From sequence record LC680885.1: a stretch of 64,000 nucleotides of DNA. One strand, written 5' to 3'. Position 1 is the first letter of the stretch; the number at the start of each line of letters is the position of its first letter. Of this stretch, positions 7,901-56,508 are shown piece after piece. The notes beneath the pieces were generated by a model. That model ran no database searches, was not told where the DNA came from, and saw nothing but the letters and a program-made list of their open reading frames with translations. Both the position numbers and the translations under genes were made by a program.

Positions 7901-7915
7901 TATATTATAAAAATG
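7901..7915 (+). promoter_or_regulatory. putative early (virion RNAP) promoter TATATTAT-N5-TG
   Basis: One of 14 intergenic copies with fixed spacing; hairpin begins at the final G. Confidence 0.75.
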
Positions 7916-7950
7916 AGGTAATGACATTAGCTTGTCATTACCTCTAATAT
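7915..7950 (+). repeat. GAGGTAATG..CATTACCTC-TAATAT hairpin repeat, copy 1
   Basis: 12-bp inverted repeat; five intergenic copies. Confidence 0.85.
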
Positions 7951-7972
7951 ATTTAAATAATAGGAGAGTGTT

Positions 7973-8407
7973 TTGGATATGGAAAAAGTTATAGAAAATA
8001 CGGTAAAAGAATTAAGAGAATTGGCAGTAAAAGAAATAGAGTTTTTTGGTGAACCTGAAATAAACGTATTTCATATTAATGGATATACACTTATAAGCTT
8101 AAGTAGAGATTTTTATCTTTTCACATCAGTTAAAGATGATAATAAAGAGATTTTAAACGCATTATTAAAAGATGATTTATTTAATTATTTTGATGAATAT
8201 GATAATAAATTTGGATTTTTCGTATATTATGAAACTGTTGTAGATAAAAAGACAAATAAAAAAGGAGAATGGAAGAATCTCAAACACTTAATAGATACTT
8301 TTGAATGGGAAAATGGAGACCTTTTAGAATTTGTAAAGGAAGAAAATTTATCAGTGAATGAGTCGTTAAAGAAAAAAGAATTAAGAGAATCTACAGAAGA
8401 ATTATAA
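7973..8407 (+). CDS. hypothetical protein
   Basis: ORF with AGGAG RBS after an early promoter (likely start 7979). Confidence 0.65.
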   Translation: MDMEKVIENTVKELRELAVKEIEFFGEPEINVFHINGYTLISLSRDFYLFTSVKDDNKEILNALLKDDLFNYFDEYDNKFGFFVYYETVVDKKTNKKGEWKNLKHLIDTFEWENGDLLEFVKEENLSVNESLKKKELRESTEEL

Positions 8408-8475
8408 AATTGAGTAGAACATATAAGTATCCTTAAGTTCATACAATTTATATGAATTTAGAAAGGAGTAACTAT

Positions 8476-8625
8476 ATGATTACTTGGTTAATAGCTATAC
8501 TAGTAGTTTTATTAATACTAGGTATTATATTCCGTGGACTGTTAGCAGTAATACCACCTATGGGATGGTCTGGAATTGTAGTTGCAATCTTAGTTATATT
8601 AGTAGTATTTTACCTATTCAGGTAG
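8476..8625 (+). CDS. small two-TM membrane protein (49 aa; not in ORF track)
   Basis: AAGGAG RBS; MITWLIAILVVLLILGIIFRGLLAVIPPMGWSGIVVAILVILVVFYLFR. Confidence 0.7.
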   Translation: MITWLIAILVVLLILGIIFRGLLAVIPPMGWSGIVVAILVILVVFYLFR

Positions 8626-8630
8626 ATAAA

Positions 8631-8667
8631 GAGGTAATGGCATATTATATGTCATTACCTCTAATAT
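8631..8667 (+). repeat. GAGGTAATG hairpin repeat, copy 2
   Basis: 14-bp stem with a G-U pair, followed by TAATAT. Confidence 0.8.
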
Positions 8668-8692
8668 ATCGCAATTAAAGTATTTTCAAGCA

Positions 8693-8707
8693 TATATTAT
8701 TTAAATG
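8693..8707 (+). promoter_or_regulatory. putative early promoter TATATTAT-N5-TG
   Basis: Consensus match; hairpin AGATAATGATT/AATCATTATCT follows. Confidence 0.7.
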
Positions 8708-8761
8708 AGATAATGATTATACCAATCATTATCTTTTAATAAAAAACGGGAGGTATAAGGT

Positions 8762-9052
8762 ATGAAAGAATTAACAAGTTCAGTAGAAAAAGCAGCAGGT
8801 ACAAGTTGGAGTGCGTTAGTAACACATCAAGTTTTTATAGGGTTAGGTTTAGTTTTATTAAGTTTAATCGTATTTGCTATTTTGTATTATGCATTTAAAA
8901 AATTAAATGTCATGAATAACTTATCACCTATCATTGTATTGGTAGTTATTTTAGTTATTGGAATTGATTTGGCTTTATTCGGATACGGTTTAATGCATAT
9001 ATTTAATCCAGGATATTATGCATTACAAGAAATTAAAGAAGTCATTAAATAA
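8762..9052 (+). CDS. membrane protein, two TM helices
   Basis: GGAGG RBS; two hydrophobic segments. Confidence 0.7.
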   Translation: MKELTSSVEKAAGTSWSALVTHQVFIGLGLVLLSLIVFAILYYAFKKLNVMNNLSPIIVLVVILVIGIDLALFGYGLMHIFNPGYYALQEIKEVIK

Positions 9053-9140
9053 ATGATTTCAATGAATCAATACAATAATAGATAATAATTAAAAAAGTTA
9101 TTATCTATTATTATTTTTAAACTAGGAGAGTGAAATTGAT

Positions 9141-9488
9141 ATGAATAAAGATTATGAAAAAGTAAAGCTAAATTCTATAAATGAAATATTGGGAGGAGTG
9201 GATATTGAATCTTCTTTATATAGATTTTGGGAAATATATAGCAAGAAATATGATGAATATGTTTATTTAGTTTTTGAAGACATAGATTATGAAAATAATT
9301 ATAACAATACAGTTAATATTAAAGGGATATTTAGAATTGACACTTCTGATAAATCTTTATTATTTGAAGATGAATTTACATTCAATAATGTATTGGTAAC
9401 GGATTCAGCTGAGGATTTTGGTATTAGAGTAGATAACTATGCATATGATGATCTAATAAAACATCTAGAGGAAAATAAAATTATTTAA
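9141..9488 (+). CDS. hypothetical protein
   Basis: ORF with RBS. Confidence 0.65.
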   Translation: MNKDYEKVKLNSINEILGGVDIESSLYRFWEIYSKKYDEYVYLVFEDIDYENNYNNTVNIKGIFRIDTSDKSLLFEDEFTFNNVLVTDSAEDFGIRVDNYAYDDLIKHLEENKII

Positions 9489-9509
9489 AATTATAGGAGA
9501 TGAATAGAT

Positions 9510-15837: not shown

Positions 15838-15874
15838 GAGGTAATGACAAATTATATGTCATTACCTCTAATAT
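15838..15874 (+). repeat. GAGGTAATG hairpin repeat, copy 3
   Basis: GAGGTAATGACA/TGTCATTACCTC plus TAATAT. Confidence 0.85.
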
Positions 15875-15893: not shown

Positions 15894-16985
15894 ATGAAAA
15901 AATCATTAATAACAGCATCATTATTAAGTACGGTACTACTGTTGGGAGCATGCGGAAACGAAGGATCATCATCAGAGAATAAAGGGTCAAACTTAAAACC
16001 AGAAAAGCAAGAAGAAATTTATTCTAAAGAAGCAAAATTATTAGGTAAAGCAATAAGTAATGAAGATGCTATGGATGATTCTACAAATAAAGTTTCAGAT
16101 GATTTTAAGAAATCTTTAGACAGATATGAAGATAAAACTAAAAATTTAGATAGCGTAGATACTCAAGTTGGTGATTTAACTTTAAGAGTTGGAAAATCTA
16201 TTGAAATCATGAGTGAACGCATGTATGAATTAGATAAGTTCAATAAAGATAATCCAGATAAAGAAATGGAATACAATCTAGCTCTTGTTGATGTTGGAAT
16301 TAATACCGCTCAATCTCTAGAAAGTATAAATGAAGATTATGAATCAATCGATGTATCATATAAAAATGAAATTATCGGTAAGAAAGCTAATGAAGAAGTA
16401 ACTGATGTTTTATCAACTTTCCCAGCATATGAACTTGATGAATTGATAGATGATTATGGAACTGGTATTGTTGGAAATGATGAAACAGATCTAACACAAG
16501 AACAACAAAAAGTATTATCAGACACTAAATATCGAGATGAACTTAAAAAAGAAGTAATGACTCAAGAAGAACCAGACGCTTCTAAAAATGAATATAATGA
16601 ATCTGTGAATATGTTTAATAAATTTGCACCAGAATTCCTTCATTATAAAGAAGTAGATGAAATGGTATCTTCAACAGAAAATAACAATATGATGGATATC
16701 AGAAATGCTGTTGTAAGTGCTAATACAGATGCCGGAGTAGATAGTTATGAAGATATGGAAGAAGATGCTGAATCATTAGAAGATGATACTGAGAGTATCG
16801 AAGATGAAGAAAGATCAGATGACGAAGGATATGATATTGATGGCTGGTCTGCAGAATCTTATAATGAATTAGTAGATGAATATAACACTCTTACTGATGG
16901 TGAAAAAATGGATCACGTAGATGAAGATGTATCTAATATTGAATATGAACAATTAGAAGAGAGAGTTGCAAAATTAGAAGAATAA
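15894..16985 (+). CDS. acidic lipoprotein with a duplicated C-terminal motif
   Basis: Lipobox LGAC; repeat YNExVxx[FY]N..H..VDExVSxxE twice. Confidence 0.75.
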   Translation: MKKSLITASLLSTVLLLGACGNEGSSSENKGSNLKPEKQEEIYSKEAKLLGKAISNEDAMDDSTNKVSDDFKKSLDRYEDKTKNLDSVDTQVGDLTLRVGKSIEIMSERMYELDKFNKDNPDKEMEYNLALVDVGINTAQSLESINEDYESIDVSYKNEIIGKKANEEVTDVLSTFPAYELDELIDDYGTGIVGNDETDLTQEQQKVLSDTKYRDELKKEVMTQEEPDASKNEYNESVNMFNKFAPEFLHYKEVDEMVSSTENNNMMDIRNAVVSANTDAGVDSYEDMEEDAESLEDDTESIEDEERSDDEGYDIDGWSAESYNELVDEYNTLTDGEKMDHVDEDVSNIEYEQLEERVAKLEE

Positions 16986-22680: not shown

Positions 22681-22695
22681 TATATTATAAGATTG
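22681..22695 (+). promoter_or_regulatory. putative early promoter TATATTAT-N5-TG
   Basis: Consensus; hairpin GTAGAATAT/ATATTCTAC starts at the final G. Confidence 0.75.
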
Positions 22696-22758
22696 TAGAA
22701 TATTAAGAGCATGATATTCTACAAATATATTCATTATTATAGGAGAGTGTATTAAGAT

Positions 22759-25538: not shown

Positions 25539-25553
25539 TATATTATAAATATG
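25539..25553 (+). promoter_or_regulatory. putative early promoter TATATTAT-N5-TG
   Basis: Consensus; hairpin GAGACAATG/CATTGTCTC at the final G. Confidence 0.75.
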
Positions 25554-25617
25554 AGACAATGTTCATTAACTTGATCATTGTCTCATATATTGTTTTATTT
25601 TTTATAAAAATAAGGAG

Positions 25618-35367: not shown

Positions 35368-35382
35368 TATATTATAAAATTG
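35368..35382 (+). promoter_or_regulatory. putative early promoter TATATTAT-N5-TG
   Basis: Consensus; hairpin GAAAGATGTAT/ATACATCTTTC follows. Confidence 0.75.
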
Positions 35383-35434
35383 TGAAAGATGTATGATACT
35401 TATACATCTTTCTAAAATATTTATTTAAAGAGAG

Positions 35435-37111: not shown

Positions 37112-37126
37112 TATATTATTAAATTG
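37112..37126 (+). promoter_or_regulatory. putative early promoter TATATTAT-N5-TG
   Basis: Consensus; GAGGTAATG hairpin starts at the final G. Confidence 0.75.
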
Positions 37127-37162
37127 AGGTAATGACATACAATTTGTCATTACCTCTAATAT
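37126..37162 (+). repeat. GAGGTAATG hairpin repeat, copy 4
   Basis: 12-bp stem plus TAATAT. Confidence 0.85.
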
Positions 37163-43146: not shown

Positions 43147-43161
43147 TATATTATAAAAGTG
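43147..43161 (+). promoter_or_regulatory. putative early promoter TATATTAT-N5-TG
   Basis: Consensus; GAGGTAATG hairpin at the final G. Confidence 0.72.
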
Positions 43162-43195
43162 AGGTAATGGATATTATATTCATTACCTCTAATAT
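43161..43195 (+). repeat. GAGGTAATG hairpin repeat, copy 5
   Basis: 13-bp stem with G-U plus TAATAT. Confidence 0.8.
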
Positions 43196-45198: not shown

Positions 45199-45213
45199 TA
45201 TATTATAATTATG
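45199..45213 (+). promoter_or_regulatory. putative early promoter TATATTAT-N5-TG
   Basis: Consensus; RBS follows directly with no hairpin. Confidence 0.7.
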
Positions 45214-45230
45214 AAGGGAGGAATATAATA

Positions 45231-45476
45231 ATGATATTTAATATTCTAATAGCAATTGCATATGAGATGCTTGTTTCTTTAGGTTTAGGTGTTTCAGCTT
45301 TTTATATATCTTTATTTTTATTAAGATATATAAAAAATAATATTATCAAGAAAGAAATTAAAAATGAAAATAGAAAGTTATTTTATTTTTCATTATTAAT
45401 AGTTATAATATTTATGTCAATAAAATCATACGTTGATATAAAATTAAGTATTATAGAACAAATATTGAAAATGTAA
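45231..45476 (+). CDS. small two-TM protein
   Basis: Hydrophobic helices; GGAGG RBS. Confidence 0.6.
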   Translation: MIFNILIAIAYEMLVSLGLGVSAFYISLFLLRYIKNNIIKKEIKNENRKLFYFSLLIVIIFMSIKSYVDIKLSIIEQILKM

Positions 45477-45503: not shown

Positions 45504-45518
45504 TATATTATAATTATG
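45504..45518 (+). promoter_or_regulatory. putative early promoter with upstream AAAAAGCGTAAC element
   Basis: Consensus; upstream box 45475-45486. Confidence 0.75.
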
Positions 45519-45570
45519 AAGATATAATAATATTAATTATATCTTTAATAAAAATAAAGGAGAAATTAAA

Positions 45571-46537: not shown

Positions 46538-46552
46538 TATATTATAATTATG
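46538..46552 (+). promoter_or_regulatory. putative early promoter with upstream AAAAAGCGTAAC element
   Basis: Consensus; upstream box 46509-46520. Confidence 0.75.
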
Positions 46553-46606
46553 AAGAAAGATAAAGTATTAATATCTTTCTAAATAAATCAAATGGAGGAA
46601 TTTAAA

Positions 46607-47195: not shown

Positions 47196-47237
47196 AAAGT
47201 TGAATTTGAAAAAGCGTAACGTAAGATATTTTAATTA

Positions 47238-47252
47238 TATATTATAATAATG
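47238..47252 (+). promoter_or_regulatory. putative early promoter with upstream AAAAAGCGTAAC element
   Basis: Consensus; upstream box 47209-47220. Confidence 0.75.
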
Positions 47253-47304
47253 AAGAAAGAGATTATCATTAACTCTTTCTAATAAATTAAAAGGAGAAAT
47301 TATT

Positions 47305-47490: not shown

Positions 47491-47521
47491 CTAAAACTAA
47501 AAATAAAAAGGAGAAATTAAA

Positions 47522-47698: not shown

Positions 47699-47703
47699 TT
47701 AAA

Positions 47704-48009
47704 ATGGTCAGAGAAGAAAAAATCAAACAAATGAAACAAGAATTACAAGCAATTTTAGACAAAGAAATTAGGTTTAATGGTAAACCAATTTCAAATAAAC
47801 AATTTGAGAGAAAATTAGAACTAATGAAACAAATAGAAAAGTTAAAATTTGACATTAGATCAGAAAGATATCTGAGAAATGTCAAAAAGAATAAAATCAC
47901 TGAGTTTAAGGGTAAAAGTGATTATGCGAAAGCAGGAAGACTACATCAATCTTTCCAAAGTAAAGAAGAGCATAAAATATGGAAAGAAGATTTATTAGTA
48001 ATTCAATAA
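47704..48009 (+). CDS. basic protein, KAGRLH family copy 2
   Basis: GGGAG RBS; SDYAKAGRLH. Confidence 0.6.
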   Translation: MVREEKIKQMKQELQAILDKEIRFNGKPISNKQFERKLELMKQIEKLKFDIRSERYLRNVKKNKITEFKGKSDYAKAGRLHQSFQSKEEHKIWKEDLLVIQ

Positions 48010-48032
48010 TATATTAAATGGAGGAATTTAAA

Positions 48033-48227
48033 ATGAAAAAGATTATTAAATTAAAAACTGAGTATGCATTAATTTTAGGAATGTTAGTTGGGCTATTATT
48101 AGGATTATTAACTATGAATTTCTTTTTAGCGTTAGATATTATGTTCATGACAACTTTAGCATTTGTAGGTATGAATCATTATATCGGTGAAAAAAGAATG
48201 AATAATAGAAAAGGGGAAGTAAATTAA
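48033..48227 (+). CDS. small two-TM protein
   Basis: GGAGG RBS; similar to 48229. Confidence 0.6.
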   Translation: MKKIIKLKTEYALILGMLVGLLLGLLTMNFFLALDIMFMTTLAFVGMNHYIGEKRMNNRKGEVN

Positions 48228-48228
48228 T

Positions 48229-48423
48229 ATGCAGAATAAAATTAAGATAAAACCATGGATAGTATTTTGGACCGTATTTATTATTGGATTTATAGTTGGA
48301 GAAATTCTAGGTTATGTAGAAGGTAAATCATTGTTTGTAGGTATCGTATCAGCATTTATTTGTTTAGGAATTAATTATATGGTTGGAGAAATTAGAAGAG
48401 ATATTATTAGAAATAGAAAATAA
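48229..48423 (+). CDS. small two-TM protein
   Basis: Shares G[ML]NY.[IV]GE.R with 48033. Confidence 0.6.
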   Translation: MQNKIKIKPWIVFWTVFIIGFIVGEILGYVEGKSLFVGIVSAFICLGINYMVGEIRRDIIRNRK

Positions 48424-48456
48424 AAATTAATTAAATTATAAGGAGTTGAATTGGAT

Positions 48457-48564
48457 ATGTTATTAGAAAACTTCATTACAATTATCGTGTTACTTGGCTT
48501 AATGAAATTTACAGGTTGTTTCAAATTTATGAAAGAAATCTGGTCTAACAAAGGTAACAAATAG
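48457..48564 (+). CDS. 35-aa hydrophobic peptide with basic tail (not in ORF track)
   Basis: AGGAG RBS; MLLENFITIIVLLGLMKFTGCFKFMKEIWSNKGNK. Confidence 0.5.
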   Translation: MLLENFITIIVLLGLMKFTGCFKFMKEIWSNKGNK

Positions 48565-48641
48565 CAATAAAAGAGTGGATTATTTTCTATGATCCACTCT
48601 ACATATTTAAATTAAAAAAAAAACGAAAAGAGGAAATTAAA

Positions 48642-49148
48642 ATGAAAAAATTATTAATGACATTAGCATCAATCGCTTTAATCGCAGTTATCGGAGCAGC
48701 AGGGATATTTGGTTATAGTAGTTTTAAAAGCTTAACAGTCAATAAAGAAGATAGTAAGACTGAAGAAGTATCTAAAAAGAAAGAAGACAAAAAAGAAAAG
48801 AAAGAACAAGAAGAATCAGATAATGTAGAAGTAAATCAACAACAAGATCAAACTCAAGAAGTAAATAATAATGAACGACAAAATCAAACTACAGAAGATA
48901 ATAATACAAATGTACAACAAAATCAACAACAAGAACCAGTAGTTGAAGAGAAAACTCAAGTAACAGATAATGAAGGTAATAATATAGATGATATGGATTC
49001 AGAAGAATTTATTTCTAAATATACGGAAGGAATGGATGAAGAAGAAGCTCAAACAGTAAAAGACATGGCTGAAGAAGATTCAGGATATGAAGATTTCTTA
49101 CGTGGACAAGTAGAAGCTAGACAAAACGGACAAGGCGGAAATTACTAA
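48642..49148 (+). CDS. membrane-anchored Q/E/N-rich protein, triplet member 1
   Basis: MKKLL..IALIAVIGAAGIFGYS. Confidence 0.7.
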   Translation: MKKLLMTLASIALIAVIGAAGIFGYSSFKSLTVNKEDSKTEEVSKKKEDKKEKKEQEESDNVEVNQQQDQTQEVNNNERQNQTTEDNNTNVQQNQQQEPVVEEKTQVTDNEGNNIDDMDSEEFISKYTEGMDEEEAQTVKDMAEEDSGYEDFLRGQVEARQNGQGGNY

Positions 49149-49171
49149 TAAGAAGAAAAGAGTGAAATGAA

Positions 49172-49639
49172 ATGAAAAAAATCTTAAGTATTTTAACAGC
49201 GATAGCTTTAATCACAGTTATCGGAGCAGCAGGAGTATTCGGCTATAGTAGTTTTAAAGAATTAAATAATAGTAAAGATAGTCATAAAGTTGAAACAAGT
49301 AAAAAACAAAAAGAATCAGATGATAAAAATAACACTCAACAACAAGAACAAAATACATCAAAAGAAAACAACAATATCCAACAACAATCAAATGAAGATA
49401 GCCTAACAGAAAATATGGATGAAGAATATAAAAAACAACAGGAAATGTATGAAAGGCAATCAAAAGATGAAGCTCCAGAACCGGATTCTATAATTGGCAA
49501 CCCACCAAAAAATTATGAAACTCCAGAAAAAGATAAAATAACTATAAGTGAGTTAAGAGAAGTTTTAGGCGATGATATTGATGAAAGTAAAATTGATGAA
49601 GCAAAAGCGTCTGGCGAATATATTAATGATGAAGAATAA
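49172..49639 (+). CDS. membrane-anchored Q/E/N-rich protein, triplet member 2
   Basis: MKKIL..IALITVIGAAGVFGYS. Confidence 0.7.
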   Translation: MKKILSILTAIALITVIGAAGVFGYSSFKELNNSKDSHKVETSKKQKESDDKNNTQQQEQNTSKENNNIQQQSNEDSLTENMDEEYKKQQEMYERQSKDEAPEPDSIIGNPPKNYETPEKDKITISELREVLGDDIDESKIDEAKASGEYINDEE

Positions 49640-49670
49640 AAAATAAATAAAAAGAATAGAGGAAAATAAA

Positions 49671-50147
49671 ATGAAAAAATTATTAGTATCATTATCAATC
49701 TTAGCAGTAATTGTAGTATTAGTAGCGGCAGGTGTGTTTGGATATTCAAAATATAAAGAAGTAGAAATGAAACAACAGAATTTAGAAACACAATTAGAAG
49801 AAAAAAATTCCAATGAGCAAACTAATGAAAACGATCAACAACAAGAACAAGCAAATACAAATGAATCTCAAAATCAAGAAAATAGTTCAACAAAAAACAA
49901 TAACGACAATAAACAAAAAGTATCTAGAGACAATGTATTTGACTATGCTTTAGCTGCAGTAAATGAAGTAGGTGACGCTGATTTAATGAAATTCCAAGAA
50001 CCTTCTTACAGTGATGGTGTATGGACAATTGACACTAATAATAAATCTGGTTCAGGATCTAATACTATAAAAGTATACGATGATGGCTGGGTACAGATAT
50101 ATGATGGATCTGGTGAAATAGCTCATGAAACAAAAATAGAACTATAA
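49671..50147 (+). CDS. membrane-anchored Q/E/N-rich protein, triplet member 3
   Basis: MKKLL..LVAAGVFGYS; small folded C-terminal domain. Confidence 0.7.
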   Translation: MKKLLVSLSILAVIVVLVAAGVFGYSKYKEVEMKQQNLETQLEEKNSNEQTNENDQQQEQANTNESQNQENSSTKNNNDNKQKVSRDNVFDYALAAVNEVGDADLMKFQEPSYSDGVWTIDTNNKSGSGSNTIKVYDDGWVQIYDGSGEIAHETKIEL

Positions 50148-50167
50148 TTATTAAGGAGTGTTGATGA

Positions 50168-50413
50168 ATGATTAAAACAGAAACAAAAAATGAACATTTA
50201 TTTTTCAAATTTATTTCAGAATTAGGACTAACTAACGTGTATGATAACTTTATTGTAAGTGTTCCTTCAGGTCCTAAATTCATCAGATTAAATGAATTTG
50301 ATGAGGTAGAAGTGTATGAAAAATGCAATGAAAACCTAATCAAAGTAGTCAATATAGATACTAAATTTGATGATGTATTTTCGTTATTTTTCAAAATAAC
50401 GAAAGGAATTTAA
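50168..50413 (+). CDS. hypothetical protein
   Basis: AAGGAG RBS. Confidence 0.6.
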   Translation: MIKTETKNEHLFFKFISELGLTNVYDNFIVSVPSGPKFIRLNEFDEVEVYEKCNENLIKVVNIDTKFDDVFSLFFKITKGI

Positions 50414-50491
50414 AATATTATAGTCATGAATCTATTCAAGTAGATTCATGACTATTAATTATATATTTTTTTATAAATATAAGAAAGAGAG

Positions 50492-51193
50492 ATGACATTA
50501 ATTGTGTATGAAATTTCAGTAGCTCTAATGTTTTTAATCATAATATATTTTTCATTCAATACAATATATAAAACATTAGTAAGTGCGTATAACGAAAAAT
50601 TAAAAGGAAAATTCTTTTCCACAACGTTTTTGATATCTAGTTTATTATTTCCAATAATGATTATTGTATTTTACAATATAGATGGAATAGATATTGAAAT
50701 AGAATATGTTTTATTTTATTTTATACTATTAATAATTAACTTTGTATTAAATAAATTTCTTAAAGTTCATGATATTATAGTATATACGTCATTATTCTAT
50801 TCTTTATTTATAATGAATTATCATTATGAAATAGCTAACGACTTATATTTTGCTATATTTATTATAATAATAAATTTAACAATTCCATTAATTAAAATTT
50901 ATTTTCAATTAATGGAAATTGTAATTCAAACTGATGGAGAATATAAAGATATAGATATTAAAAAGAATATATTAAGACAGAATTTAAAAATAGTTAATTT
51001 AAATGATAACAATGCAAAATTTTCATTAGATGATTTTCTTGAAAGTAAATTTAATAATGATGAAGAATCAATAAGTGAATTCTTAGATAAAATGATTGAA
51101 AAAATATATTCTGAAAAAATAAATATAAAGTTGTATTGTTATCATATATTAATGGCATTATTAACTATATACTTTTTATTATCTCAAATTTAA
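50492..51193 (+). CDS. polytopic membrane protein
   Basis: Five to six hydrophobic helices. Confidence 0.65.
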   Translation: MTLIVYEISVALMFLIIIYFSFNTIYKTLVSAYNEKLKGKFFSTTFLISSLLFPIMIIVFYNIDGIDIEIEYVLFYFILLIINFVLNKFLKVHDIIVYTSLFYSLFIMNYHYEIANDLYFAIFIIIINLTIPLIKIYFQLMEIVIQTDGEYKDIDIKKNILRQNLKIVNLNDNNAKFSLDDFLESKFNNDEESISEFLDKMIEKIYSEKINIKLYCYHILMALLTIYFLLSQI

Positions 51194-51196
51194 ATA

Positions 51197-51211
51197 TATA
51201 TTATAAAAATG
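51197..51211 (+). promoter_or_regulatory. putative early promoter TATATTAT-N5-TG
   Basis: Consensus; hairpin GAGATTAATAA/TTATTAATCTC at the final G. Confidence 0.75.
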
Positions 51212-51251
51212 AGATTAATAATTTATTATTAATCTCAAATAAAAATTAAAG

Positions 51252-51782
51252 GTGGAAATAATTATGACACAAGAATTTTATGCAATCGTACAGTTTCAAA
51301 CTAATAGAAAATTTCAAGGAAAAGAGTATATTTATAAAGTACCTAAAAGACTTATTAAAAATGAAGATGAATTAGGATTAGAAAAATTTGCAATTGTATC
51401 TAATTTCAATCATAAAGATAGTAATTCAGTTCTAAGTCTTGCAGAAGATATTGCTAACGCTATTAGACCGGTAAAAATTAATAAAATCATGAATGAAGAT
51501 GAATTTATTGAATCAGAATATGTTGAAGATGCAGATGATTTAAATTATAGAAAAACCGATCAAGATGAAAGAGTTGAGTACAAATACTTATTATCTTTTA
51601 TCAAAGATGATGTTTATGATTATATTGAAGATATTGAGAAAGAAAAGGAAAAAGAAAAAATTGAAAAATTAATGAGACTAAGATTACAGAAGTTAGAAAA
51701 GAAAAAATCGTTTGACAATATTGTTGCGAGTTATGATGATAAAGAATTAAATGAATTATTTAATCGTTTTAAAGAATTATAA
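51252..51782 (+). CDS. hypothetical protein
   Basis: ORF after an early promoter (likely start at MTQEF). Confidence 0.65.
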   Translation: MEIIMTQEFYAIVQFQTNRKFQGKEYIYKVPKRLIKNEDELGLEKFAIVSNFNHKDSNSVLSLAEDIANAIRPVKINKIMNEDEFIESEYVEDADDLNYRKTDQDERVEYKYLLSFIKDDVYDYIEDIEKEKEKEKIEKLMRLRLQKLEKKKSFDNIVASYDDKELNELFNRFKEL

Positions 51783-51790
51783 ATATAATA

Positions 51791-51820
51791 TCCCAATGAG
51801 ATGAATTATTCTCATTGGGA
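51791..51820 (+). terminator. terminator-like hairpin
   Basis: TCCCAATGAGA/TCTCATTGGGA. Confidence 0.6.
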
Positions 51821-51854
51821 TTATTTAATTACTTAATTAGGAGATGAAAAGGAT

Positions 51855-52685
51855 ATGTATAACAATAAAAATTTTATGTCAAGTTTAAATTTAAACGAAA
51901 CAAAGTTGAGTGAATTTATAGATAAAGAAGATATAAATTCTGATGTGTCTAAGAAAGTGTATTATGAGAAAGTTATTGATTTGTACATGGATCAAATATT
52001 TAATGTAGATAATGAATTCTTAAAAAGTCTAATTGACTTTGATGATTTAAAATATACTAAAGATGAATTAGATTATATAATATATGAAGAAATGGGAGTA
52101 AATAGAAATAATAAAAAAGACTTATCTTTAATTCTTAATAGAGTATATGAATCTTATAAAGAATCTAAATCAGATAAAAATTATTATTTAATGAAATATT
52201 TATTACCGTTTACTCTATATAATGATAGAATTTTTAATAAAAACTTTTATTTACATTTTGGAGCTAATAGATTTTTTAAAAATGAATTTATAGATGCAAT
52301 TACTGATACTTTTATGTATATTAGAGATAATAATATAGAATGTGAAGTTATAGAATTATTATTTAACGATATACTCACTAAATTATATGTGCACAGTAAT
52401 GAAGTAGTATCTAGAATTTTAGTTAGAATAGCTAAAAAAGACGCTAGTTTATTATTTACCGATGATACTATATTTAATATACTATATTCTTTATATTCAC
52501 ATCAAACTATTAAGAAAATAAAAAGAAATATAAGTATAGAAAGTATCGAAAAAATTATTAAAATGAATAGATATACTTATATTGAAAGAATTGAAAAAGC
52601 TATAGGAAGACAATTATCTTTTTATGATAATCCAAACGGTAAAGAAATAAAGAATATGATAAAAGAATTTAAAAATAATAAATAG
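51855..52685 (+). CDS. hypothetical protein
   Basis: ORF with RBS. Confidence 0.65.
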   Translation: MYNNKNFMSSLNLNETKLSEFIDKEDINSDVSKKVYYEKVIDLYMDQIFNVDNEFLKSLIDFDDLKYTKDELDYIIYEEMGVNRNNKKDLSLILNRVYESYKESKSDKNYYLMKYLLPFTLYNDRIFNKNFYLHFGANRFFKNEFIDAITDTFMYIRDNNIECEVIELLFNDILTKLYVHSNEVVSRILVRIAKKDASLLFTDDTIFNILYSLYSHQTIKKIKRNISIESIEKIIKMNRYTYIERIEKAIGRQLSFYDNPNGKEIKNMIKEFKNNK

Positions 52686-52700
52686 GGAGTTGAAACGGAT

Positions 52701-53201
52701 ATGTTAAAAAATAAAAATATTGAAATTAACCAAGATATTATTAATCAAGAATTAATGAAAACAAAATATATGGAAGAGGCGATGTTAAAAGTGTTAAATC
52801 AAGACCTAGTAATCAATTTAAGATTTTTAAAAGATAATCTACTAACTGGATGGGAATTTGAAAATAATACAGCTGAATTTAAAGAAATAGAAAAATTCTA
52901 TGATCCGTCACTAAAAATAAGATTAATTTTTAAAGTTAATAATGAAAAAGAAATCAAGTATACAATTAATGAAGATGTTCAAGATATTTTAGAAAACTTT
53001 ATGATTAAAAAATCAAATGACGAAAGAGCTTGTGAAATTATTAAATCTGTTATTGAGTATGAATTCTTTAAGAAAGAAAATAAAAAGGGTCATGAACTTG
53101 ATATGAATACAATAGATTTATTAATGGGTAAAGTTAATGAATTAAAAATTAAGTACAATATCAGTAATAAACAAGCTAAGAAATTATATATAGCATTTTA
53201 A
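52701..53201 (+). CDS. hypothetical protein
   Basis: ORF with RBS. Confidence 0.65.
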   Translation: MLKNKNIEINQDIINQELMKTKYMEEAMLKVLNQDLVINLRFLKDNLLTGWEFENNTAEFKEIEKFYDPSLKIRLIFKVNNEKEIKYTINEDVQDILENFMIKKSNDERACEIIKSVIEYEFFKKENKKGHELDMNTIDLLMGKVNELKIKYNISNKQAKKLYIAF

Positions 53202-53226
53202 AATATAACTAAAGAGAGGTAATTTC

Positions 53227-53853
53227 ATGAGAAAAACAGTAAATCTATTTGATTGGTATATCTATAAAAATGGAGAATATACATTGATTCCTTACTTCTT
53301 CAGATTAGCTTCAGGATTATTAATATTAATTGTATTCTCATCTTTAACTGTAATTAATATTAAATTATCTTTTATATCATTAATGGTAACAATTCCAACA
53401 TTTTTGATAATTAATCTATTAATTTATTTATATTTTAATAAAAATTGTCTTAGAGAATATGGAGAAATAAATAAATCTTTTAAAGTGAAAGATAAATATT
53501 ATTCTTTTTGGTATATTGAATTAAATGAAGATAATGAGGTTTTTAAAGAAGCTTTTAATAATTTTAAAAATGAACACGAATGGATTATAGAAGAAGAAAA
53601 TATAAAAAATCTATCAGAAATACTGTCACAAAAATTTTTTATAAAAGACACTAAAATAGTAGAGACTGTAGCGAGAGAAAAAAGAAAACATTGGAAGAAC
53701 AATATTGACACTAATAGACTGATAACTTATAGAGAGTTTCTTAAATATAGAAAGAATAAAAAGAAATTTGAAGAGTCTAAGAAGTTAGAAAAGGAAATAA
53801 AAGAGTTTCAAGATTATTACAATTTAAACACTAAAGGAGAAATTAAAAAATGA
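53227..53853 (+). CDS. membrane protein of the HWxNxIxTN family
   Basis: Two TM helices; HWKNNIDTN..IKEFQDYY. Confidence 0.65.
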   Translation: MRKTVNLFDWYIYKNGEYTLIPYFFRLASGLLILIVFSSLTVINIKLSFISLMVTIPTFLIINLLIYLYFNKNCLREYGEINKSFKVKDKYYSFWYIELNEDNEVFKEAFNNFKNEHEWIIEEENIKNLSEILSQKFFIKDTKIVETVAREKRKHWKNNIDTNRLITYREFLKYRKNKKKFEESKKLEKEIKEFQDYYNLNTKGEIKK

Positions 53854-54314
53854 ATACTAAAATAATCGCAGCATTTCCGGGTACAGGTAAATCTTACATC
53901 AAAAATAATATCTCATTCTTAAAAACATCTGATTCAGATTCAACTAGTTTTTCATGGATAATTAAAGATGGAGAAAAAGTTAGAAATCCTAAATTTCCAA
54001 CGAATTATATTAGTTATATTAAGGATCTCTATTATAAAAATGTAATGGATTATATTTTCGTATCAACTCATAAAGAAGTTATCCAAGAGTTGATTGATAA
54101 TAATTTAGAATTTGTAGTAGCTTATCCAAAACGTTCAGATAAAGAATTATATTTAAAGAGATACAAAGAAAGAGGTTCAGATAGTAAATTTATTGAGCTT
54201 CTTGATAATATGTTTGATAGTTTTATAGATGATATAGAGAATAGAGTTCCTGAAGAAAACAGAATTGAACTTAATCATAATGAATATTTAGCTAACGTAT
54301 TAGATAAAATTTAA
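53850..54314 (+). CDS. small P-loop NTPase / kinase-like protein
   Basis: IIAAFPGTGKS Walker A; YLKRYKERG lid-like segment. Confidence 0.7.
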   Translation: MNTKIIAAFPGTGKSYIKNNISFLKTSDSDSTSFSWIIKDGEKVRNPKFPTNYISYIKDLYYKNVMDYIFVSTHKEVIQELIDNNLEFVVAYPKRSDKELYLKRYKERGSDSKFIELLDNMFDSFIDDIENRVPEENRIELNHNEYLANVLDKI

Positions 54315-54331
54315 ATAAGGAGAAATTAAAA

Positions 54332-54790
54332 ATGAGATACTTTAAAGGTATAGTAGCAGGAAAAGACTTTTTCTTAAAAGCAGATAATGAAGAAAATGCC
54401 ATTAAGGAATTAGCATCAAAAGAAATTAATTCTATAGGATCTTTTACAATGTTAAGTAATGAAAAACAGAAATACCTAATAATTTTCTTTAATGAAGATG
54501 AAGATAAATTTGTTGTTGGAAATGGATTAGAATCATATATATCATTAGACAGTCTTAAATCTGAATTAGAATCTAAAGATTTAGAATGTTATTATTTAGA
54601 TTTAGGTAATACAGATAATATCGAGATAAACGGTATTATAAAAAATCAAGAATACACATTAACAGAAATAATAATGGAAAGTATTAAATTAACTATGAAT
54701 GATTTTTATCAACAAGTTATAAATTCTGTATTAACTGAATTAACTGAAAAAGAATACAAAAATTCAATAGTTGTTAAAAATTTTAAATAA
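54332..54790 (+). CDS. C-terminal-tag family protein
   Basis: MRYF..; ends ELTEKEYKNSIVVKNFK. Confidence 0.72.
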   Translation: MRYFKGIVAGKDFFLKADNEENAIKELASKEINSIGSFTMLSNEKQKYLIIFFNEDEDKFVVGNGLESYISLDSLKSELESKDLECYYLDLGNTDNIEINGIIKNQEYTLTEIIMESIKLTMNDFYQQVINSVLTELTEKEYKNSIVVKNFK

Positions 54791-54809
54791 CTAGGAAGGA
54801 ATAAAAATA

Positions 54810-55280
54810 GTGAGAAATAAAAAAAGAAGCATAGATAGTTTGATAAATAATAATCTAGAATTACCAATTGAGATTACTGAAAATTATATAAATAATTTTA
54901 TATACAAATCATTAACTGCTATAAATAAGAAAAAAGAAATAAAACCAAATCAAACTTATATAATTAATCATAAGAATGAATTATTTAATAAAGCAGATAA
55001 TTTCATAAATTGTATTTTAGAATTATTAAAAGGTGATGTGGGTACTTTAATAGATAAAAAAGATTTAAAGTTAAAAAGAAATGTAAAGAAAGACAATATA
55101 AGTAATTGTCTTACAATATATACTATTGTAGAAACTTTAACTTACAATAATTCTATAACAATGATGATGGTAAAAAATGTAAATAATACCAATAAGGAAG
55201 TAACTGGTGAACTAATATTTGATATTAATATAAGTGATAAATTAGGTAAAGATAATTACAATGAAAATATTTATATTTAA
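54810..55280 (+). CDS. hypothetical protein
   Basis: GTG-start ORF. Confidence 0.55.
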   Translation: MRNKKRSIDSLINNNLELPIEITENYINNFIYKSLTAINKKKEIKPNQTYIINHKNELFNKADNFINCILELLKGDVGTLIDKKDLKLKRNVKKDNISNCLTIYTIVETLTYNNSITMMMVKNVNNTNKEVTGELIFDINISDKLGKDNYNENIYI

Positions 55281-55294
55281 TTACTATTTAAATA

Positions 55295-55309
55295 TATATT
55301 ATATAAATG
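55295..55309 (+). promoter_or_regulatory. putative early promoter TATATTAT-N5-TG
   Basis: Consensus; no clear hairpin. Confidence 0.7.
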
Positions 55310-55335
55310 AAGTTAATTAAAATACAGGAGATGAA

Positions 55336-55683
55336 TTGGATATGTTAAACGATACTAAAAAGATTTTAGACAGAATATACGACAAAATAAATGGTGATTT
55401 AATTGTTATTTCAGAGTGTAAAGATCTATTTGATAAGGAATTAAATTACACTTTAACTGAAGGTAATGAAGAAACAACAAATCTTGATTATTTGGCAGAT
55501 TCTTTAATTGTAGTTGCTTCAGATATATTTACTTTAAAAGAAGTACTTAATATTGACGAAGAAACTATTAATAATGAACTATTAGCAGAATTTAAACTAA
55601 GCTATAGAATGATACAAAATTTTCATATGAAATTAGAATTAAATAGTTATAAATTAAAAAAGATTAAAACCTCGGTTGAATAA
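55336..55683 (+). CDS. hypothetical protein
   Basis: ORF with RBS. Confidence 0.6.
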   Translation: MDMLNDTKKILDRIYDKINGDLIVISECKDLFDKELNYTLTEGNEETTNLDYLADSLIVVASDIFTLKEVLNIDEETINNELLAEFKLSYRMIQNFHMKLELNSYKLKKIKTSVE

Positions 55684-55702
55684 ATATAGGAGATGATTAG
55701 GA

Positions 55703-56188
55703 ATGAATTATTTAAAGAATGAAAAAGGGGAGGTCTTTCCAGTCAATGAAGAAGGAATGGAGAATATTATATTCTTTCTTCTAGACTACTCACAGAAAAA
55801 TGATTATAACACAATGAATTTGATTAAAGAGATAAATGATCACGTGATGAAAGGCGAAAATATAAGTAATAAATTTATTAATGAAAAGACAAAAGAAACG
55901 ATATTAACATTAGGTAAAGTAAAAGGTAATTTAACTAATGAATTAGCTAGAAGTGGTTATATAGTTAATTTCTCTAGAAATAAAATATCACTATCGATAT
56001 ATGTAAAAAATAATAGTTTTAAATTAGTAAGAATTTCAGATCATAATATTAATAAAAAAATAAATAAAAAAGGTGTAATCAGTAATAGATTTGACGGACA
56101 ATTAGTATGTAAAAATAATCTAGTTAAATCTTCTGATTTGAAAAAGCATGGAATTGATATTAATGAAGGAATATATTATTTAGAATAG
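55703..56188 (+). CDS. hypothetical protein (RISDH motif)
   Basis: ORF with RBS. Confidence 0.6.
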   Translation: MNYLKNEKGEVFPVNEEGMENIIFFLLDYSQKNDYNTMNLIKEINDHVMKGENISNKFINEKTKETILTLGKVKGNLTNELARSGYIVNFSRNKISLSIYVKNNSFKLVRISDHNINKKINKKGVISNRFDGQLVCKNNLVKSSDLKKHGIDINEGIYYLE

Positions 56189-56189
56189 G

Positions 56190-56483
56190 ATGAAACTATA
56201 TATGAAAAAGATAATAATGTTTTTAGGTATTTTGTTACTAACAACGGTATTGGTCGGTTGTGGAGAAAGTGTTGATTCAAAAGATAAAAAAGATTCAATC
56301 AAAACAGTAACTATTTATAGTAAAGACGGTAAAGTATTACATCAATATGAAGGAAAAGTTAGTGCTGAGAGAGTAACGGATAACAAATTTACTAAAATTG
56401 ATATAGACGGTAAGAAATTAAGAGTTGTAAATGCAGATGTAGTTATTGAAGAGAAAGGTATTGAGAAATTTGAAACAAAATAA
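56190..56483 (+). CDS. lipoprotein
   Basis: MKKIIMFLGILLLTTVLVGC lipobox. Confidence 0.72.
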   Translation: MKLYMKKIIMFLGILLLTTVLVGCGESVDSKDKKDSIKTVTIYSKDGKVLHQYEGKVSAERVTDNKFTKIDIDGKKLRVVNADVVIEEKGIEKFETK

Positions 56484-56493
56484 AGATTAAGTA

Positions 56494-56508
56494 TATATTA
56501 TAATTATG
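56494..56508 (+). promoter_or_regulatory. putative early promoter TATATTAT-N5-TG
   Basis: Consensus; hairpin AGAAAGATAT/ATATCTTTCT follows. Confidence 0.75.

What the first reader, a model, noticed from the sequence alone, without database searches (positions are those of the whole stretch)
7901..56508. Fourteen TATATTAT-N5-TG promoters whose predicted +1 is the base of an RNA hairpin
Seen: TATATTAT followed exactly 5 nt later by TG at 7901, 8693, 22681, 25539, 35368, 37112, 43147, 45199, 45504, 46538, 47238, 51197, 55295 and 56494, all intergenic and mostly preceded by TA. In 12 of 14 an 8-13 bp stem starts within 0-2 nt of that G, and the stem sequences differ (GAGGTAATG, GTAGAATAT, GAGACAATG, AGAAAGAT, GAGATTAAT). 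Known: phiKZ early promoters are TATATTAC; 5'-terminal stem-loops protect Firmicutes mRNA from RppH/RNase J. Inference: a systematic 5'-end shield for early mRNAs, or a hairpin recognised by virion RNAP as in N4.
Basis: partly seen in the sequence, partly recalled or inferred. Interest (0 to 1): 0.7.

Follow-up and report, generated by a model that had tools for sequence, protein, structure and literature searches.

The report
Early phage promoters with 5' RNA hairpins
In this giant Staphylococcus phage, most early promoters used by the phage's injected RNA polymerase are followed by a hairpin that would sit at the very first base of the message; the promoter motif is already published, but the hairpin seems unreported, occurs only in the Staphylococcus branch of this phage family, and most likely shields the 5' end of early mRNAs.

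Summary
TATATTAT-N5-TG occurs 15 times, all on the + strand, against 1.85 expected. Twelve of the 14 are followed by a 9-13 bp hairpin starting at +1 (8 sites) or +3 (4 sites).

The window is Staphylococcus jumbo phage S6, an AR9/PBS1-like phage. The motif is the AR9-type virion-RNAP early promoter, AAATATATATTAT-N6-G(+1). Its start site was mapped in AR9, and the motif has already been reported for the S6 relative MarsHill.

The hairpin coupling appears unreported in the papers I searched.
- It occurs at 52 of 71 good-context promoters in five Staphylococcus jumbo phages, and at 0 of 27 in AR9, BpSp and Listeria LPJP1.
- It is locked to +1. It persists through compensatory changes and complete stem replacement.
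- It is selected on the sense strand: 41 G·U pairs against 3.
- It lacks a U-tract and ends 12-24 nt before the Shine-Dalgarno sequence.

The best explanation is a 5'-terminal stem-loop that protects early mRNAs from 5'-end-dependent decay. This is inferred, not shown. N4-like hairpin recognition is not supported. A terminator or insulator role is unlikely. I rate it a new variant of a known kind, of moderate interest.

The parts
7901..7944 (+). Early promoter (TATATTAT 7901-7908, predicted +1 G at 7915) plus 5' hairpin 7915-7944 (12 bp, loop 6; GAGGTAATGACA type). Upstream of ORF 7973-8407.
   Evidence: dG -19.1, z -7.1
8693..8735 (+). Early promoter (+1 at 8707) plus 5' hairpin 8707-8735 (12 bp, loop 5). 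A separate promoterless hairpin lies just upstream at 8630-8662.
   Evidence: dG -10.9, z -4.1; hairpin kept in the Machias orthologue
22681..22722 (+). Early promoter (+1 at 22695) plus 5' hairpin 22695-22722 (11 bp, loop 6). Upstream of the non-virion RNAP beta-subunit gene 22759-24900.
   Evidence: z -4.4; the SA1 orthologue keeps the hairpin through two double compensatory changes; Pfam RNA_pol_Rpb2_6
25539..25584 (+). Early promoter (+1 at 25553) plus 5' hairpin 25553-25584 (GAGACAATG stem with an inner 3-bp helix).
   Evidence: dG -16.5, z -4.8; the LY01 orthologue has the same stem with its loop inverted
35368..35412 (+). Early promoter (+1 at 35382) plus 5' hairpin 35384-35412 (13 bp, loop 3; starts at +3).
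   Evidence: z -5.4; the Machias and SA1 orthologues have entirely different stems that still start at +1
37112..37156 (+). Early promoter (+1 at 37126) plus 5' hairpin 37126-37156 (12 bp, loop 7; GAGGTAATGACA type).
   Evidence: dG -18.5, z -7.3; PB50 orthologue has GACA/UGUC changed to GAUA/UAUC
43147..43189 (+). Early promoter (+1 at 43161) plus 5' hairpin 43161-43189 (13 bp, loop 3). Follows the DNA primase gene.
   Evidence: z -6.8. The only promoter hairpin in 37-57 kb that also passes the lenient terminator-like scan
45199..45233 (+). Early promoter (+1 at 45213) WITHOUT a hairpin. The Shine-Dalgarno sequence GGGAGG begins at +4 and the start codon is at 45231.
   Evidence: z -0.6
45504..45546 (+). 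Early promoter (+1 at 45518) plus 5' hairpin 45518-45546 (11 bp, loop 7, AU-rich).
   Evidence: dG -8.2, z -3.5; paralogous cassette
46538..46580 (+). Early promoter (+1 at 46552) plus 5' hairpin 46554-46580 (9 bp, loop 9; AGAAAGAT type; starts at +3).
   Evidence: z -2.4; paralogous cassette
47238..47280 (+). Early promoter (+1 at 47252) plus 5' hairpin 47254-47280 (AGAAAGAG type). Compared with 46538 it carries a T-to-G and A-to-C compensatory pair. It precedes a 34-aa ORF at 47305-47409.
   Evidence: (z -2.6)
51197..51236 (+). Early promoter (+1 at 51211) plus 5' hairpin 51211-51236 (11 bp, loop 4; GAGATTAAT type).
   Evidence: z -5.2; orthologues in LY01, Machias, PB50 and SA1 have different stems that all start at +1
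55295..55343 (+). Early promoter (+1 at 55309) WITHOUT a hairpin in S6 and LY01. The leader is short, with the Shine-Dalgarno sequence at +18. Orthologues in Machias, PB50 and SA1 carry a 6-bp hairpin at +1.
56494..56535 (+). Early promoter (+1 at 56508) plus 5' hairpin 56510-56535 (10 bp, loop 6; AGAAAGAT type; starts at +3).
   Evidence: z -3.5
8223..8237 (+). It is intragenic, has no AAATA context and no hairpin, and is probably a chance match.
8630..8662 (+). Promoterless copy of the GAGGTAATGGCA...TGTCATTACCTC hairpin plus TAATATAT. It follows a stop codon, about 45 nt upstream of the 8693 promoter.
15838..15868 (+). Promoterless copy of the GAGGTAATGACA hairpin plus TAATATA. It lies 13 nt before the Shine-Dalgarno sequence of ORF 15894-16985 and has no consensus TATATTAT upstream.

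Best explanation
Each site is an AR9-type early promoter read by the multisubunit virion RNA polymerase that phage S6 injects with its DNA. Transcription starts at the G that lies 6 nt after TATATTAT. In the Staphylococcus branch of this phage family, the first 24-33 transcribed bases form a stem-loop, leaving 0-3 unpaired nucleotides at the 5' end. About 12-24 nt of A-rich spacer follow, then the Shine-Dalgarno sequence.

The most likely function is that of a generic 5'-terminal stem-loop. It would deny a single-stranded 5' end to the host's 5'-end-dependent decay enzymes (RNase J1/J2 exonuclease, RNA pyrophosphohydrolase, 5'-end-stimulated RNase Y). That would lengthen the life of early messages made from a single incoming genome.

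Shown here:
- promoter identity by homology
- existence of the hairpin and its phase-lock to the predicted +1
- conservation of structure rather than sequence
- selection on the sense strand
- restriction to one clade

Inferred:
- the start site in S6 itself
- the stabilising effect
- which nuclease is blocked
For: Promoter.
- The motif is 8-fold enriched, all on the + strand and intergenic.
- The window is 100% identical to phage S6.
- The AR9 early consensus AAATATATATTAT-(6N)-G(+1) was mapped experimentally.
- The Staphylococcus-clade consensus is TTTAAATATATATTATAAAAATGA.

Phase-lock.
- In the whole S6 genome, strict hairpins (at least 8 bp, dG -7 or lower) start within -4..+4 of +1 at 18 of 37 promoters, against 0.22 expected (P about 2e-30).
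- None starts between +5 and +85.
- By minimum-free-energy folding, 18 start at +1, 6 at +3 and 1 at +4.

Structure is selected, not sequence.
- Orthologous promoters in LY01, PB50, Machias and SA1 keep a hairpin at +1 despite compensatory changes or complete stem replacement.
- In an alignment of 16 related hairpins, 5 of 9 pairs show changes on both sides and 96.5% of cells are paired. None of 500 shuffles reached the observed value on four of five measures (49/500 for further pair types), and the slid-partner controls gave 39-54% paired.

RNA level.
- Among 62 distinct hairpins the sense fold is more stable in 43 and the antisense fold in 11.
- There are 41 G·U pairs in the sense fold against 3 in the antisense fold.

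Not a terminator.
- The tail after the hairpin is A-rich.
- Only 1 of 7 promoter hairpins in 37-57 kb passes a lenient terminator scan, whereas the promoterless hairpins there do pass.
- Five promoters carry both an upstream terminator-like hairpin and a 5' hairpin.

Not needed by the polymerase.
- Hairpins occur at 0/15 AR9, 0/4 BpSp and 0/8 LPJP1 promoters, against 52/71 in the Staphylococcus clade (Fisher 4e-12).

Fits the shield idea.
- Most hairpin-less promoters have short leaders, with the Shine-Dalgarno sequence about 3-25 nt from +1 (read by eye from the folds). In the hairpin leaders the Shine-Dalgarno sequence lies 12-24 nt after the stem.
- S. aureus RNase J1 is reported to attack 5'-triphosphate and 5'-monophosphate RNA alike, unlike the B. 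subtilis enzyme (PMC7864078).
- 5'-terminal stem-loops are established stabilisers, for example ompA, papA and aprE (reference list of PMC3997798).
Against: - No transcript 5' end has been mapped in any Staphylococcus jumbo phage. The +1 is inferred from AR9.
- No half-life data exist.
- The host-based rationale is weak. Strong sigma-A early promoters of Staphylococcus phage K show no systematic +1 hairpin. B. subtilis also has RNase J1, yet AR9 manages without hairpins.
- The G·U asymmetry could come partly from strand-biased mutation, since the sense strand has G well above C.
- Hairpins of the same sequence type also occur without a promoter (8630, 15838). Some therefore have, or had, another role, or are spread as repeats.
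- Many sites are paralogous or orthologous copies, so the counts overstate independent events.
Confidence: 0.5

Rival explanations
1. Insulator or terminator cassette, like the PeSL elements of T4-type phages. The hairpin would stop or attenuate transcription, or protect the 3' end of messages coming from the upstream gene. The promoter would simply be packed in front of it. The repeated promoter-hairpin cassettes might also act as recombination sites that shuffle small genes.
For: - PeSL cassettes (early promoter plus stem-loop in front of small ORFans) exist, and their stem-loops terminate transcription (PMC2839356).
- One Machias 5' hairpin (L014 44147-44178) is annotated 'terminator' in GenBank.
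- The window's genes are co-directional for 61 kb, so read-through is expected.
- The same hairpin type occurs without a promoter after stop codons (8630, 15838).
- The cassettes in 45-48 kb are paralogous repeats, and LY01 has one fewer.
Against: - There is no U-tract. The tails are A-rich, and only 1 of 7 passes the terminator scan, while genuine terminator-like hairpins with T-runs exist elsewhere.
- The hairpin lies downstream of the promoter and is locked to +1. PeSL stem-loops sit between -35 and -10 or over the -10 box.
- Five promoters have a separate terminator-like hairpin 53-94 nt upstream as well as the 5' hairpin.
- A terminator 30 nt into its own transcript would be self-defeating.
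Confidence: 0.17
2. A co-transcriptional aid specific to the virion RNAP. Folding of the nascent 5' RNA would help this sigma-less polymerase clear its very AT-rich promoter, resist backtracking, or avoid persistent RNA-DNA hybrids on deoxyuridine DNA.
For: - The coupling is specific to the early promoter class. Only 1 of 307 matches to the AR9 late motif AACA-N6-T[AG] has a hairpin at its start site.
- The phase-lock to +1 is tight.
Against: - Orthologous virion RNAPs of AR9, BpSp and LPJP1 use the same promoter consensus without hairpins.
- About a quarter of Staphylococcus-clade promoters lack the hairpin.
- The late motif has not been validated in S6, and most of the 307 matches are chance hits.
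Confidence: 0.13
3. A structure-specific tag read by a protein. A phage or host RNA-binding factor would recognise any 5'-terminal hairpin. It could mark early messages for timed shut-off, for preferential translation, or for exemption from phage-induced host mRNA decay.
For: - The feature is restricted to one clade, which suggests a clade-specific partner.
- The GA(G/A) start is conserved and the 5' arm is purine-rich, 76% purine in the first 9 nt.
- AR9 infection lowers host mRNA levels overall.
Against: - There is no conserved loop or stem sequence, loop size (3-9 nt) or stem length (7-14 bp).
- No candidate protein was identified.
- The idea that the stem mimics a Shine-Dalgarno / anti-Shine-Dalgarno pairing was tested and is no better than composition-matched shuffles.
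Confidence: 0.1
4. A DNA-level element: a hairpin or cruciform recognised by the virion RNAP as in phage N4, or a palindromic operator for a repressor.
For: - The repeats are inverted repeats in the DNA, and in several the palindrome extends 1-2 bp upstream of +1.
- The loop inversion between S6 and LY01 shows that the DNA palindrome can rearrange.
Against: - G·U pairs occur 41 times on the sense strand against 3 on the antisense strand, so the opposite strand would carry A·C mismatches.
- Stem sequences and the spacing between arms vary too much for a sequence-specific dimer.
- The position is downstream of +1, unlike N4 hairpins.
- The hairpin is absent from AR9-type promoters in other hosts.
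Confidence: 0.03

Closest known systems
AR9/PBS1 early (virion-RNAP) promoters, AAATATATATTAT-(6N)-G+1 (Lavysh et al. 2017, PMC5312081)
   Same: Same core motif, same spacing to a G start, same type of phage (deoxyuridine-DNA jumbo phage with two multisubunit RNAPs), and the same placement in front of early genes, including non-virion RNAP subunits.
   Different: AR9 leaders are short and unstructured. None of 15 strict-context promoters, and about 2 of the roughly 34 annotated ones, has a hairpin near +1. The AR9 paper does not mention hairpins.
Predicted early promoter motif of Staphylococcus jumbo phage MarsHill (bioRxiv 10.1101/2020.12.14.422802)
   Same: Same clade (96% identical to the window over the 8-kb query) and same TATATTAT motif, found upstream of 29 genes.
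   Different: That report describes only the promoter motif. The text contains no 'hairpin', 'stem-loop' or 'terminator'.
5'-terminal stem-loop mRNA stabilisers (E. coli ompA and papA; B. subtilis aprE leader)
   Same: A stem-loop at or within a few nucleotides of the 5' end, structure-dependent rather than sequence-dependent, followed by an accessible ribosome-binding site.
   Different: Those are single-gene features on host-RNAP transcripts with measured half-life effects. Here the feature is applied to roughly three quarters of one promoter class of a phage-encoded polymerase, and its function is untested.
PeSL (promoter-early stem-loop) cassettes of T4-type phages (PMC2839356, PMC4122927)
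   Same: Repeated composite early-promoter plus stem-loop modules in front of small genes of unknown function in variable regions. Paralogous copies could support recombination.
   Different: PeSLs use host sigma-70 promoters. Their stem-loop lies between -35 and -10 or over the -10 box, is G/C-tract rich, and acts as a terminator. Here the stem-loop starts at +1, lacks a U-tract, and the promoter belongs to a virion RNAP.
Phage N4 virion-RNAP hairpin promoters
   Same: A virion-carried RNAP and an inverted repeat at the promoter.
   Different: By my own knowledge, N4 uses a single-subunit RNAP that recognises a short DNA hairpin (5-7 bp stem, 3-nt loop) upstream of +1 on the template strand. 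Here the RNAP is multisubunit, the hairpin is transcribed, variable and dispensable, and it shows RNA-type G·U pairing.

Membership tests
AR9-type virion-RNAP early promoter | Consensus AAATATATATTAT followed by 6 nt and a G | tested here: met
   15 exact TATATTAT-N5-TG matches; the clade consensus is TTTAAATATATATTATAAAAATGA; the AR9 consensus comes from PMC5312081.
AR9-type virion-RNAP early promoter | The genome is an AR9/PBS1-like jumbo phage encoding split multisubunit virion and non-virion RNAPs | tested here: met
   The window is 100% identical to phage S6. Relatives annotate virion and non-virion RNAP subunits at syntenic positions. ORF 22759-24900 matches RNA_pol_Rpb2_6.
AR9-type virion-RNAP early promoter | Intergenic, co-oriented with the downstream gene, in front of early-type genes | tested here: met
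   14 of 15 are intergenic and on the gene strand. One precedes a non-virion RNAP subunit gene, as in AR9.
AR9-type virion-RNAP early promoter | Transcription starts at the G early in infection and does not need new protein synthesis | not testable with these tools
   This needs 5'-end mapping in infected cells. I found no transcriptome of a Staphylococcus jumbo phage.
5'-terminal stem-loop mRNA stabiliser | The stem begins within about 0-4 nt of the transcript's 5' end | tested here: met
   Relative to the predicted +1, 18 hairpins start at +1, 6 at +3 and 1 at +4 in S6. None starts at +5..+85. The start site itself is inferred.
5'-terminal stem-loop mRNA stabiliser | Structure, not sequence, is what is maintained | tested here: met
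   Stem turnover and compensatory changes in orthologues. 5 of 9 pairs covary, and 0 of 500 shuffles reach the observed value on four of five measures.
5'-terminal stem-loop mRNA stabiliser | Acts in RNA on the sense strand | tested here: met
   41 sense against 3 antisense G·U pairs; the sense fold is more stable in 43 of 62. Caveat: mutation bias.
5'-terminal stem-loop mRNA stabiliser | Lengthens mRNA half-life by blocking 5'-end-dependent nucleases | not testable with these tools
   Requires half-life assays in wild-type and RNase J, RppH and RNase Y mutant hosts.
Intrinsic (rho-independent) terminator | G+C-rich stem immediately followed by a U-tract | tested here: not met
   Only 1 of 7 promoter hairpins in 37-57 kb passes the scan, and the tails are A-rich.
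Intrinsic (rho-independent) terminator | Located at the 3' end of a transcription unit, upstream of the next promoter | tested here: not met
   The hairpin lies downstream of the promoter. Separate terminator-like hairpins sit 53-94 nt upstream at 9 promoters.
PeSL cassette (T4-type phages) | Composite early promoter plus stem-loop repeated in front of small ORFs | tested here: met
PeSL cassette (T4-type phages) | Host sigma-70-type promoter | tested here: not met
   The motif is the virion-RNAP type. Sigma-70-like sites are not enriched: 172 found against 183 expected.
PeSL cassette (T4-type phages) | Stem-loop within or over the promoter (-35/-10) that acts as a terminator | tested here: not met
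   The stem starts at +1. PeSL geometry is from PMC2839356.
PeSL cassette (T4-type phages) | Cassettes bound insertions, deletions or replacements between close relatives | tested here: inconclusive
   S6 46538 and 47238 both map to a single LY01 cassette, and there are paralogous repeats at 45-48 kb. Breakpoints were not mapped.
N4-type hairpin promoter | Short conserved DNA hairpin upstream of +1 that the virion RNAP requires | tested here: not met
   The hairpin is downstream of +1, variable, absent at about 25% of clade promoters and absent at all sampled AR9, BpSp and LPJP1 promoters.

The most novel reading that the evidence does not exclude
The +1 hairpin is not a passive shield. It would be a clade-specific functional partner of the sigma-less virion RNAP, or of an unknown phage factor: a promoter-coupled RNA element that is needed for productive early transcription, or that marks early messages as 'self' during host mRNA shut-off. 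That would make it a new kind of promoter-proximal RNA signal for phage multisubunit polymerases.
Probability: 0.12. Interest if true: 0.75.

Novelty: new variant of a known kind. Interest (0 to 1): 0.5.

Why it matters
If the hairpins are 5' shields, this would be a rare case of a whole promoter class of a virus being fitted with a generic mRNA stabiliser. It would also be a clean natural experiment. Sister phages in Bacillus and Listeria use the same promoter without the hairpin.

That contrast could show what limits early phage gene expression in staphylococci. It could also show how RNase J-type decay is evaded.

There is a practical side. The promoter-plus-hairpin module of about 45-85 bp could become a portable 5' stabiliser for expression constructs in Staphylococcus.

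For annotation, these hairpins should not be labelled terminators, as has happened at least once in GenBank.

Tried and rejected
1. N4-like DNA hairpin recognition. Rejected on position, variability, G·U asymmetry and absence from AR9, BpSp and LPJP1.

2. The upstream 'AAAAAGCGTAAC' at 45504, 46538 and 47238 as an AR9-type late promoter (AACA-N6-TA/G). The spacing does not fit. It is the shared end of paralogous genes and cassettes.

3. Hairpins at late promoters. Only 1 of 307 AACA-N6-T[AG] matches in S6 has a hairpin at its start site.

4. The 5' arm as a Shine-Dalgarno mimic, with the 3' arm as an anti-Shine-Dalgarno mimic (GAGGU, AGAAAG). Duplex energy with the 16S 3' end is -4.27 against -3.92 for composition-matched shuffles, so no signal.

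5. The host alone as the cause. Strong sigma-A early promoters of phage K have no systematic +1 hairpin.

6. Rfam. No family matches the hairpins; the only hits are a group II intron.

7. Relaxed motif search (1 mismatch, or other spacings). No further promoter-hairpin pairs in the window.

8. A first control with a loose hairpin definition. It gave a 10% background at random G positions, so I replaced it with a strict definition.

9. Literature. No mention of these hairpins in the AR9 transcriptome paper, the MarsHill preprint, the DC4 paper or the jumbo-phage RNAP review. No Staphylococcus jumbo-phage transcriptome was found.

Full report
**Observation.** The pattern TATATTAT-N5-TG occurs 15 times in the window. 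All matches are on the + strand. Dinucleotide shuffles give 1.85 on average and never more than 6. TATATTAT alone is at chance level, 40 found against 42 expected. So the signal is the motif together with its spacing to TG.

The extra match at 8223 is inside an ORF. It lacks the upstream AAATA context and has no hairpin.

Folding +1..+45 gives a dominant hairpin at 12 of the 14 sites. Energies run from -7.6 to -19.1 kcal/mol and z-scores from -2.4 to -7.3. Eight hairpins start at the G and four start two bases later. The two exceptions, 45199 and 55295, have very short leaders whose Shine-Dalgarno sequence begins at +4 and +18.

**What the window is.** An 8-kb piece is 100% identical to Staphylococcus phage S6 (LC680885, 267 kb). 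It is 77-99.6% identical to nine other Staphylococcus jumbo phages, with weak matches to Listeria LPJP1 and Bacillus BpSp. These are AR9/PBS1-like phages with a virion and a non-virion multisubunit RNAP.

In AR9, dRNA-seq and primer extension defined 41 early promoters with the consensus AAATATATATTAT-(6N)-G(+1). They are independent of protein synthesis and are therefore read by the injected virion RNAP (PMC5312081). The S6 sites match this exactly; the clade consensus is TTTAAATATATATTATAAAAATGA. The same TATATTAT motif was already reported upstream of 29 genes of MarsHill, which is 96% identical to the window over the 8-kb query. That text does not mention hairpins.

So the promoter half of the finding is known. 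AR9, not phiKZ, is the proper comparator.

**The hairpin is real, positioned and selected.** I assembled the S6 genome from fetched pieces. A strict hairpin (at least 8 bp, dG -7 or lower) starts within 4 nt of the predicted +1 at 18 of 37 promoters, against 0.22 expected (P about 2e-30). None starts between +5 and +85. Nine more lie 53-94 nt upstream and look like terminators of the preceding gene.

With a uniform folding criterion, the counts of good-context promoters carrying a 5' hairpin are:

| Phage | With hairpin |
|---|---|
| S6 | 23/30 |
| LY01 | 5/7 |
| PB50 | 7/9 |
| Machias | 10/14 |
| SA1 | 7/11 |
| AR9 | 0/15 |
| BpSp | 0/4 |
| LPJP1 | 0/8 |

These are; the Fisher test gives 4e-12.

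Orthologous promoters keep a hairpin at +1 while the sequence changes:
- 22681 against SA1 shows two double compensatory substitutions.
- 37112 against PB50 changes GACA/UGUC to GAUA/UAUC.
- At 35368 and 51197 the whole stem is different in Machias and SA1, yet it still starts at +1.

An unbiased MAFFT alignment of 16 GAGGTAATG-type sites gives 9 consensus pairs. Five have changes on both sides, and 96.5% of cells are paired. None of 500 shuffles reached the observed value on four of the five measures (49/500 for further pair types). The slid-partner controls gave only 39-54% paired.

Across 62 distinct hairpins the sense RNA is more stable than the antisense in 43 cases against 11. G·U pairs number 41 against 3. 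That places the selected structure in the transcript rather than in duplex DNA. Strand-biased mutation could contribute to this asymmetry.

**What it is not.** It is not a canonical terminator. The 10 nt after the stem are A-rich. Only one of the seven promoter hairpins in 37-57 kb meets a lenient stem-plus-T-run criterion, whereas the promoterless hairpins in the same stretch do. Five promoters carry both an upstream terminator-like hairpin and a 5' hairpin.

It is not required by the virion RNAP. Sister phages with the same promoter consensus lack it, and a quarter of the clade's own promoters lack it.

It is not an N4-type promoter hairpin. It is transcribed, variable in stem length (7-14 bp) and loop (3-9 nt), and shows RNA-type wobble pairs.

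It is not a PeSL in the strict sense. PeSLs combine sigma-70 promoters with a terminator stem-loop lying within or over the promoter. Sigma-70-like sites are not enriched here.

It matches no Rfam family. A suspected Shine-Dalgarno / anti-Shine-Dalgarno mimicry of the two stem arms is no stronger than in composition-matched shuffles.

**Most likely mechanism.** The anatomy is that of a classical 5'-terminal stem-loop stabiliser. It leaves 0-3 unpaired nucleotides at the 5' end. It tolerates any sequence as long as it pairs. A 12-24 nt unstructured spacer and an accessible Shine-Dalgarno sequence follow.

Most hairpin-less promoters simply omit the stem, which puts the ribosome-binding site about 3-25 nt from the 5' end (read by eye from the folds). 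I therefore favour protection of early messages against 5'-end-dependent decay by RNase J1/J2, pyrophosphohydrolase and RNase Y. My confidence is about 0.5.

One possible host-specific reason is that S. aureus RNase J1 is reported to degrade 5'-triphosphate RNA as readily as 5'-monophosphate RNA, unlike the B. subtilis enzyme. This rationale is weakened by phage K. Its strong sigma-A early promoters have short, unstructured leaders.

The coupling is specific to the early class. Only 1 of 307 matches to the AR9 late motif has a hairpin at its start site. This keeps a polymerase-linked or factor-linked role open.

**Novelty and score.** The promoter is already known. 5' stem-loop stabilisers and promoter-stem-loop cassettes are known kinds.

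What appears new is the systematic, +1-locked fitting of one phage-polymerase promoter class with a structure-only hairpin, together with its restriction to the Staphylococcus branch. I found no mention of it in the AR9 transcriptome paper, the MarsHill preprint, the DC4 paper or the RNAP review. One such hairpin is annotated as a terminator in the Machias record.

I rate it a new variant of a known kind, with interest 0.5.

Noticed in passing
window 5679-7532: Group II intron: Rfam RF02004 at 5679-5821 and RF00029 at 7449-7532. It lies between ORFs 3934-5670 and 7586-7894. By synteny with Machias, these are exons of the virion RNAP beta-subunit gene. The intron ORF 6097-7446 matches a DUF4379 treble-clef zinc finger, not a reverse transcriptase.
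   Followed up: partly
window 8630-8662 and 15838-15868; S6 record 48168, 65746, 15184, 166284: The GAGGTAATG(A/G)CA...TGTCATTACCTC hairpin, often followed by TAATATA, also occurs with no consensus promoter upstream. Copies follow stop codons or sit between convergent genes. The same stem type therefore serves, or once served, in more than one context.
   Followed up: partly
S6 record genome-wide (for example window 61689-61722, 3827-3856, 51790-51821): Families of strong intergenic hairpins share stems (ACCCTAACCTT, TCCCCTAATACT, CCCAATACC) and palindromic loops such as AAATTAAT. They read alike on both strands and are followed by T-runs. They are probably bidirectional terminators, but their recurrent sequences are unexplained.
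   Followed up: no
window 25553-25584 vs LY01 (L016, reverse strand, promoter 734): The stems are identical, but the loop segment CATTAACTTG is replaced by its reverse complement CAAGTTAATG in LY01. This is a small inversion flanked by the inverted repeat.
   Followed up: no
window 45188-48227: An array of paralogous cassettes, each with a promoter, a hairpin leader and a small hydrophobic ORF. Examples are 46592-46777 and 48018-48227. A 34-aa ORF at 47305-47409 is absent from the S6 annotation. A 99-nt repeat, 97% identical, occurs at 46760 and 47392. LY01 has one cassette fewer.
   Followed up: partly
window 37001-57000: Sigma-70-type promoter-like sites are not enriched: 172 found against 183 expected. 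This fits transcription that relies on the phage's own polymerases.
   Followed up: no
window 1-61700 vs 61700-64000: All sizeable ORFs are on the + strand for 61.7 kb, with GC skew between +0.1 and +0.38. Both strand and skew flip at a strong palindromic hairpin at 61689-61722.
   Followed up: no
AR9 paper (PMC5312081): AR9 early 5' ends responded poorly to terminator-exonuclease enrichment. I wondered whether 5' hairpins could explain this, but AR9 early leaders are unstructured, so they do not.
   Followed up: yes
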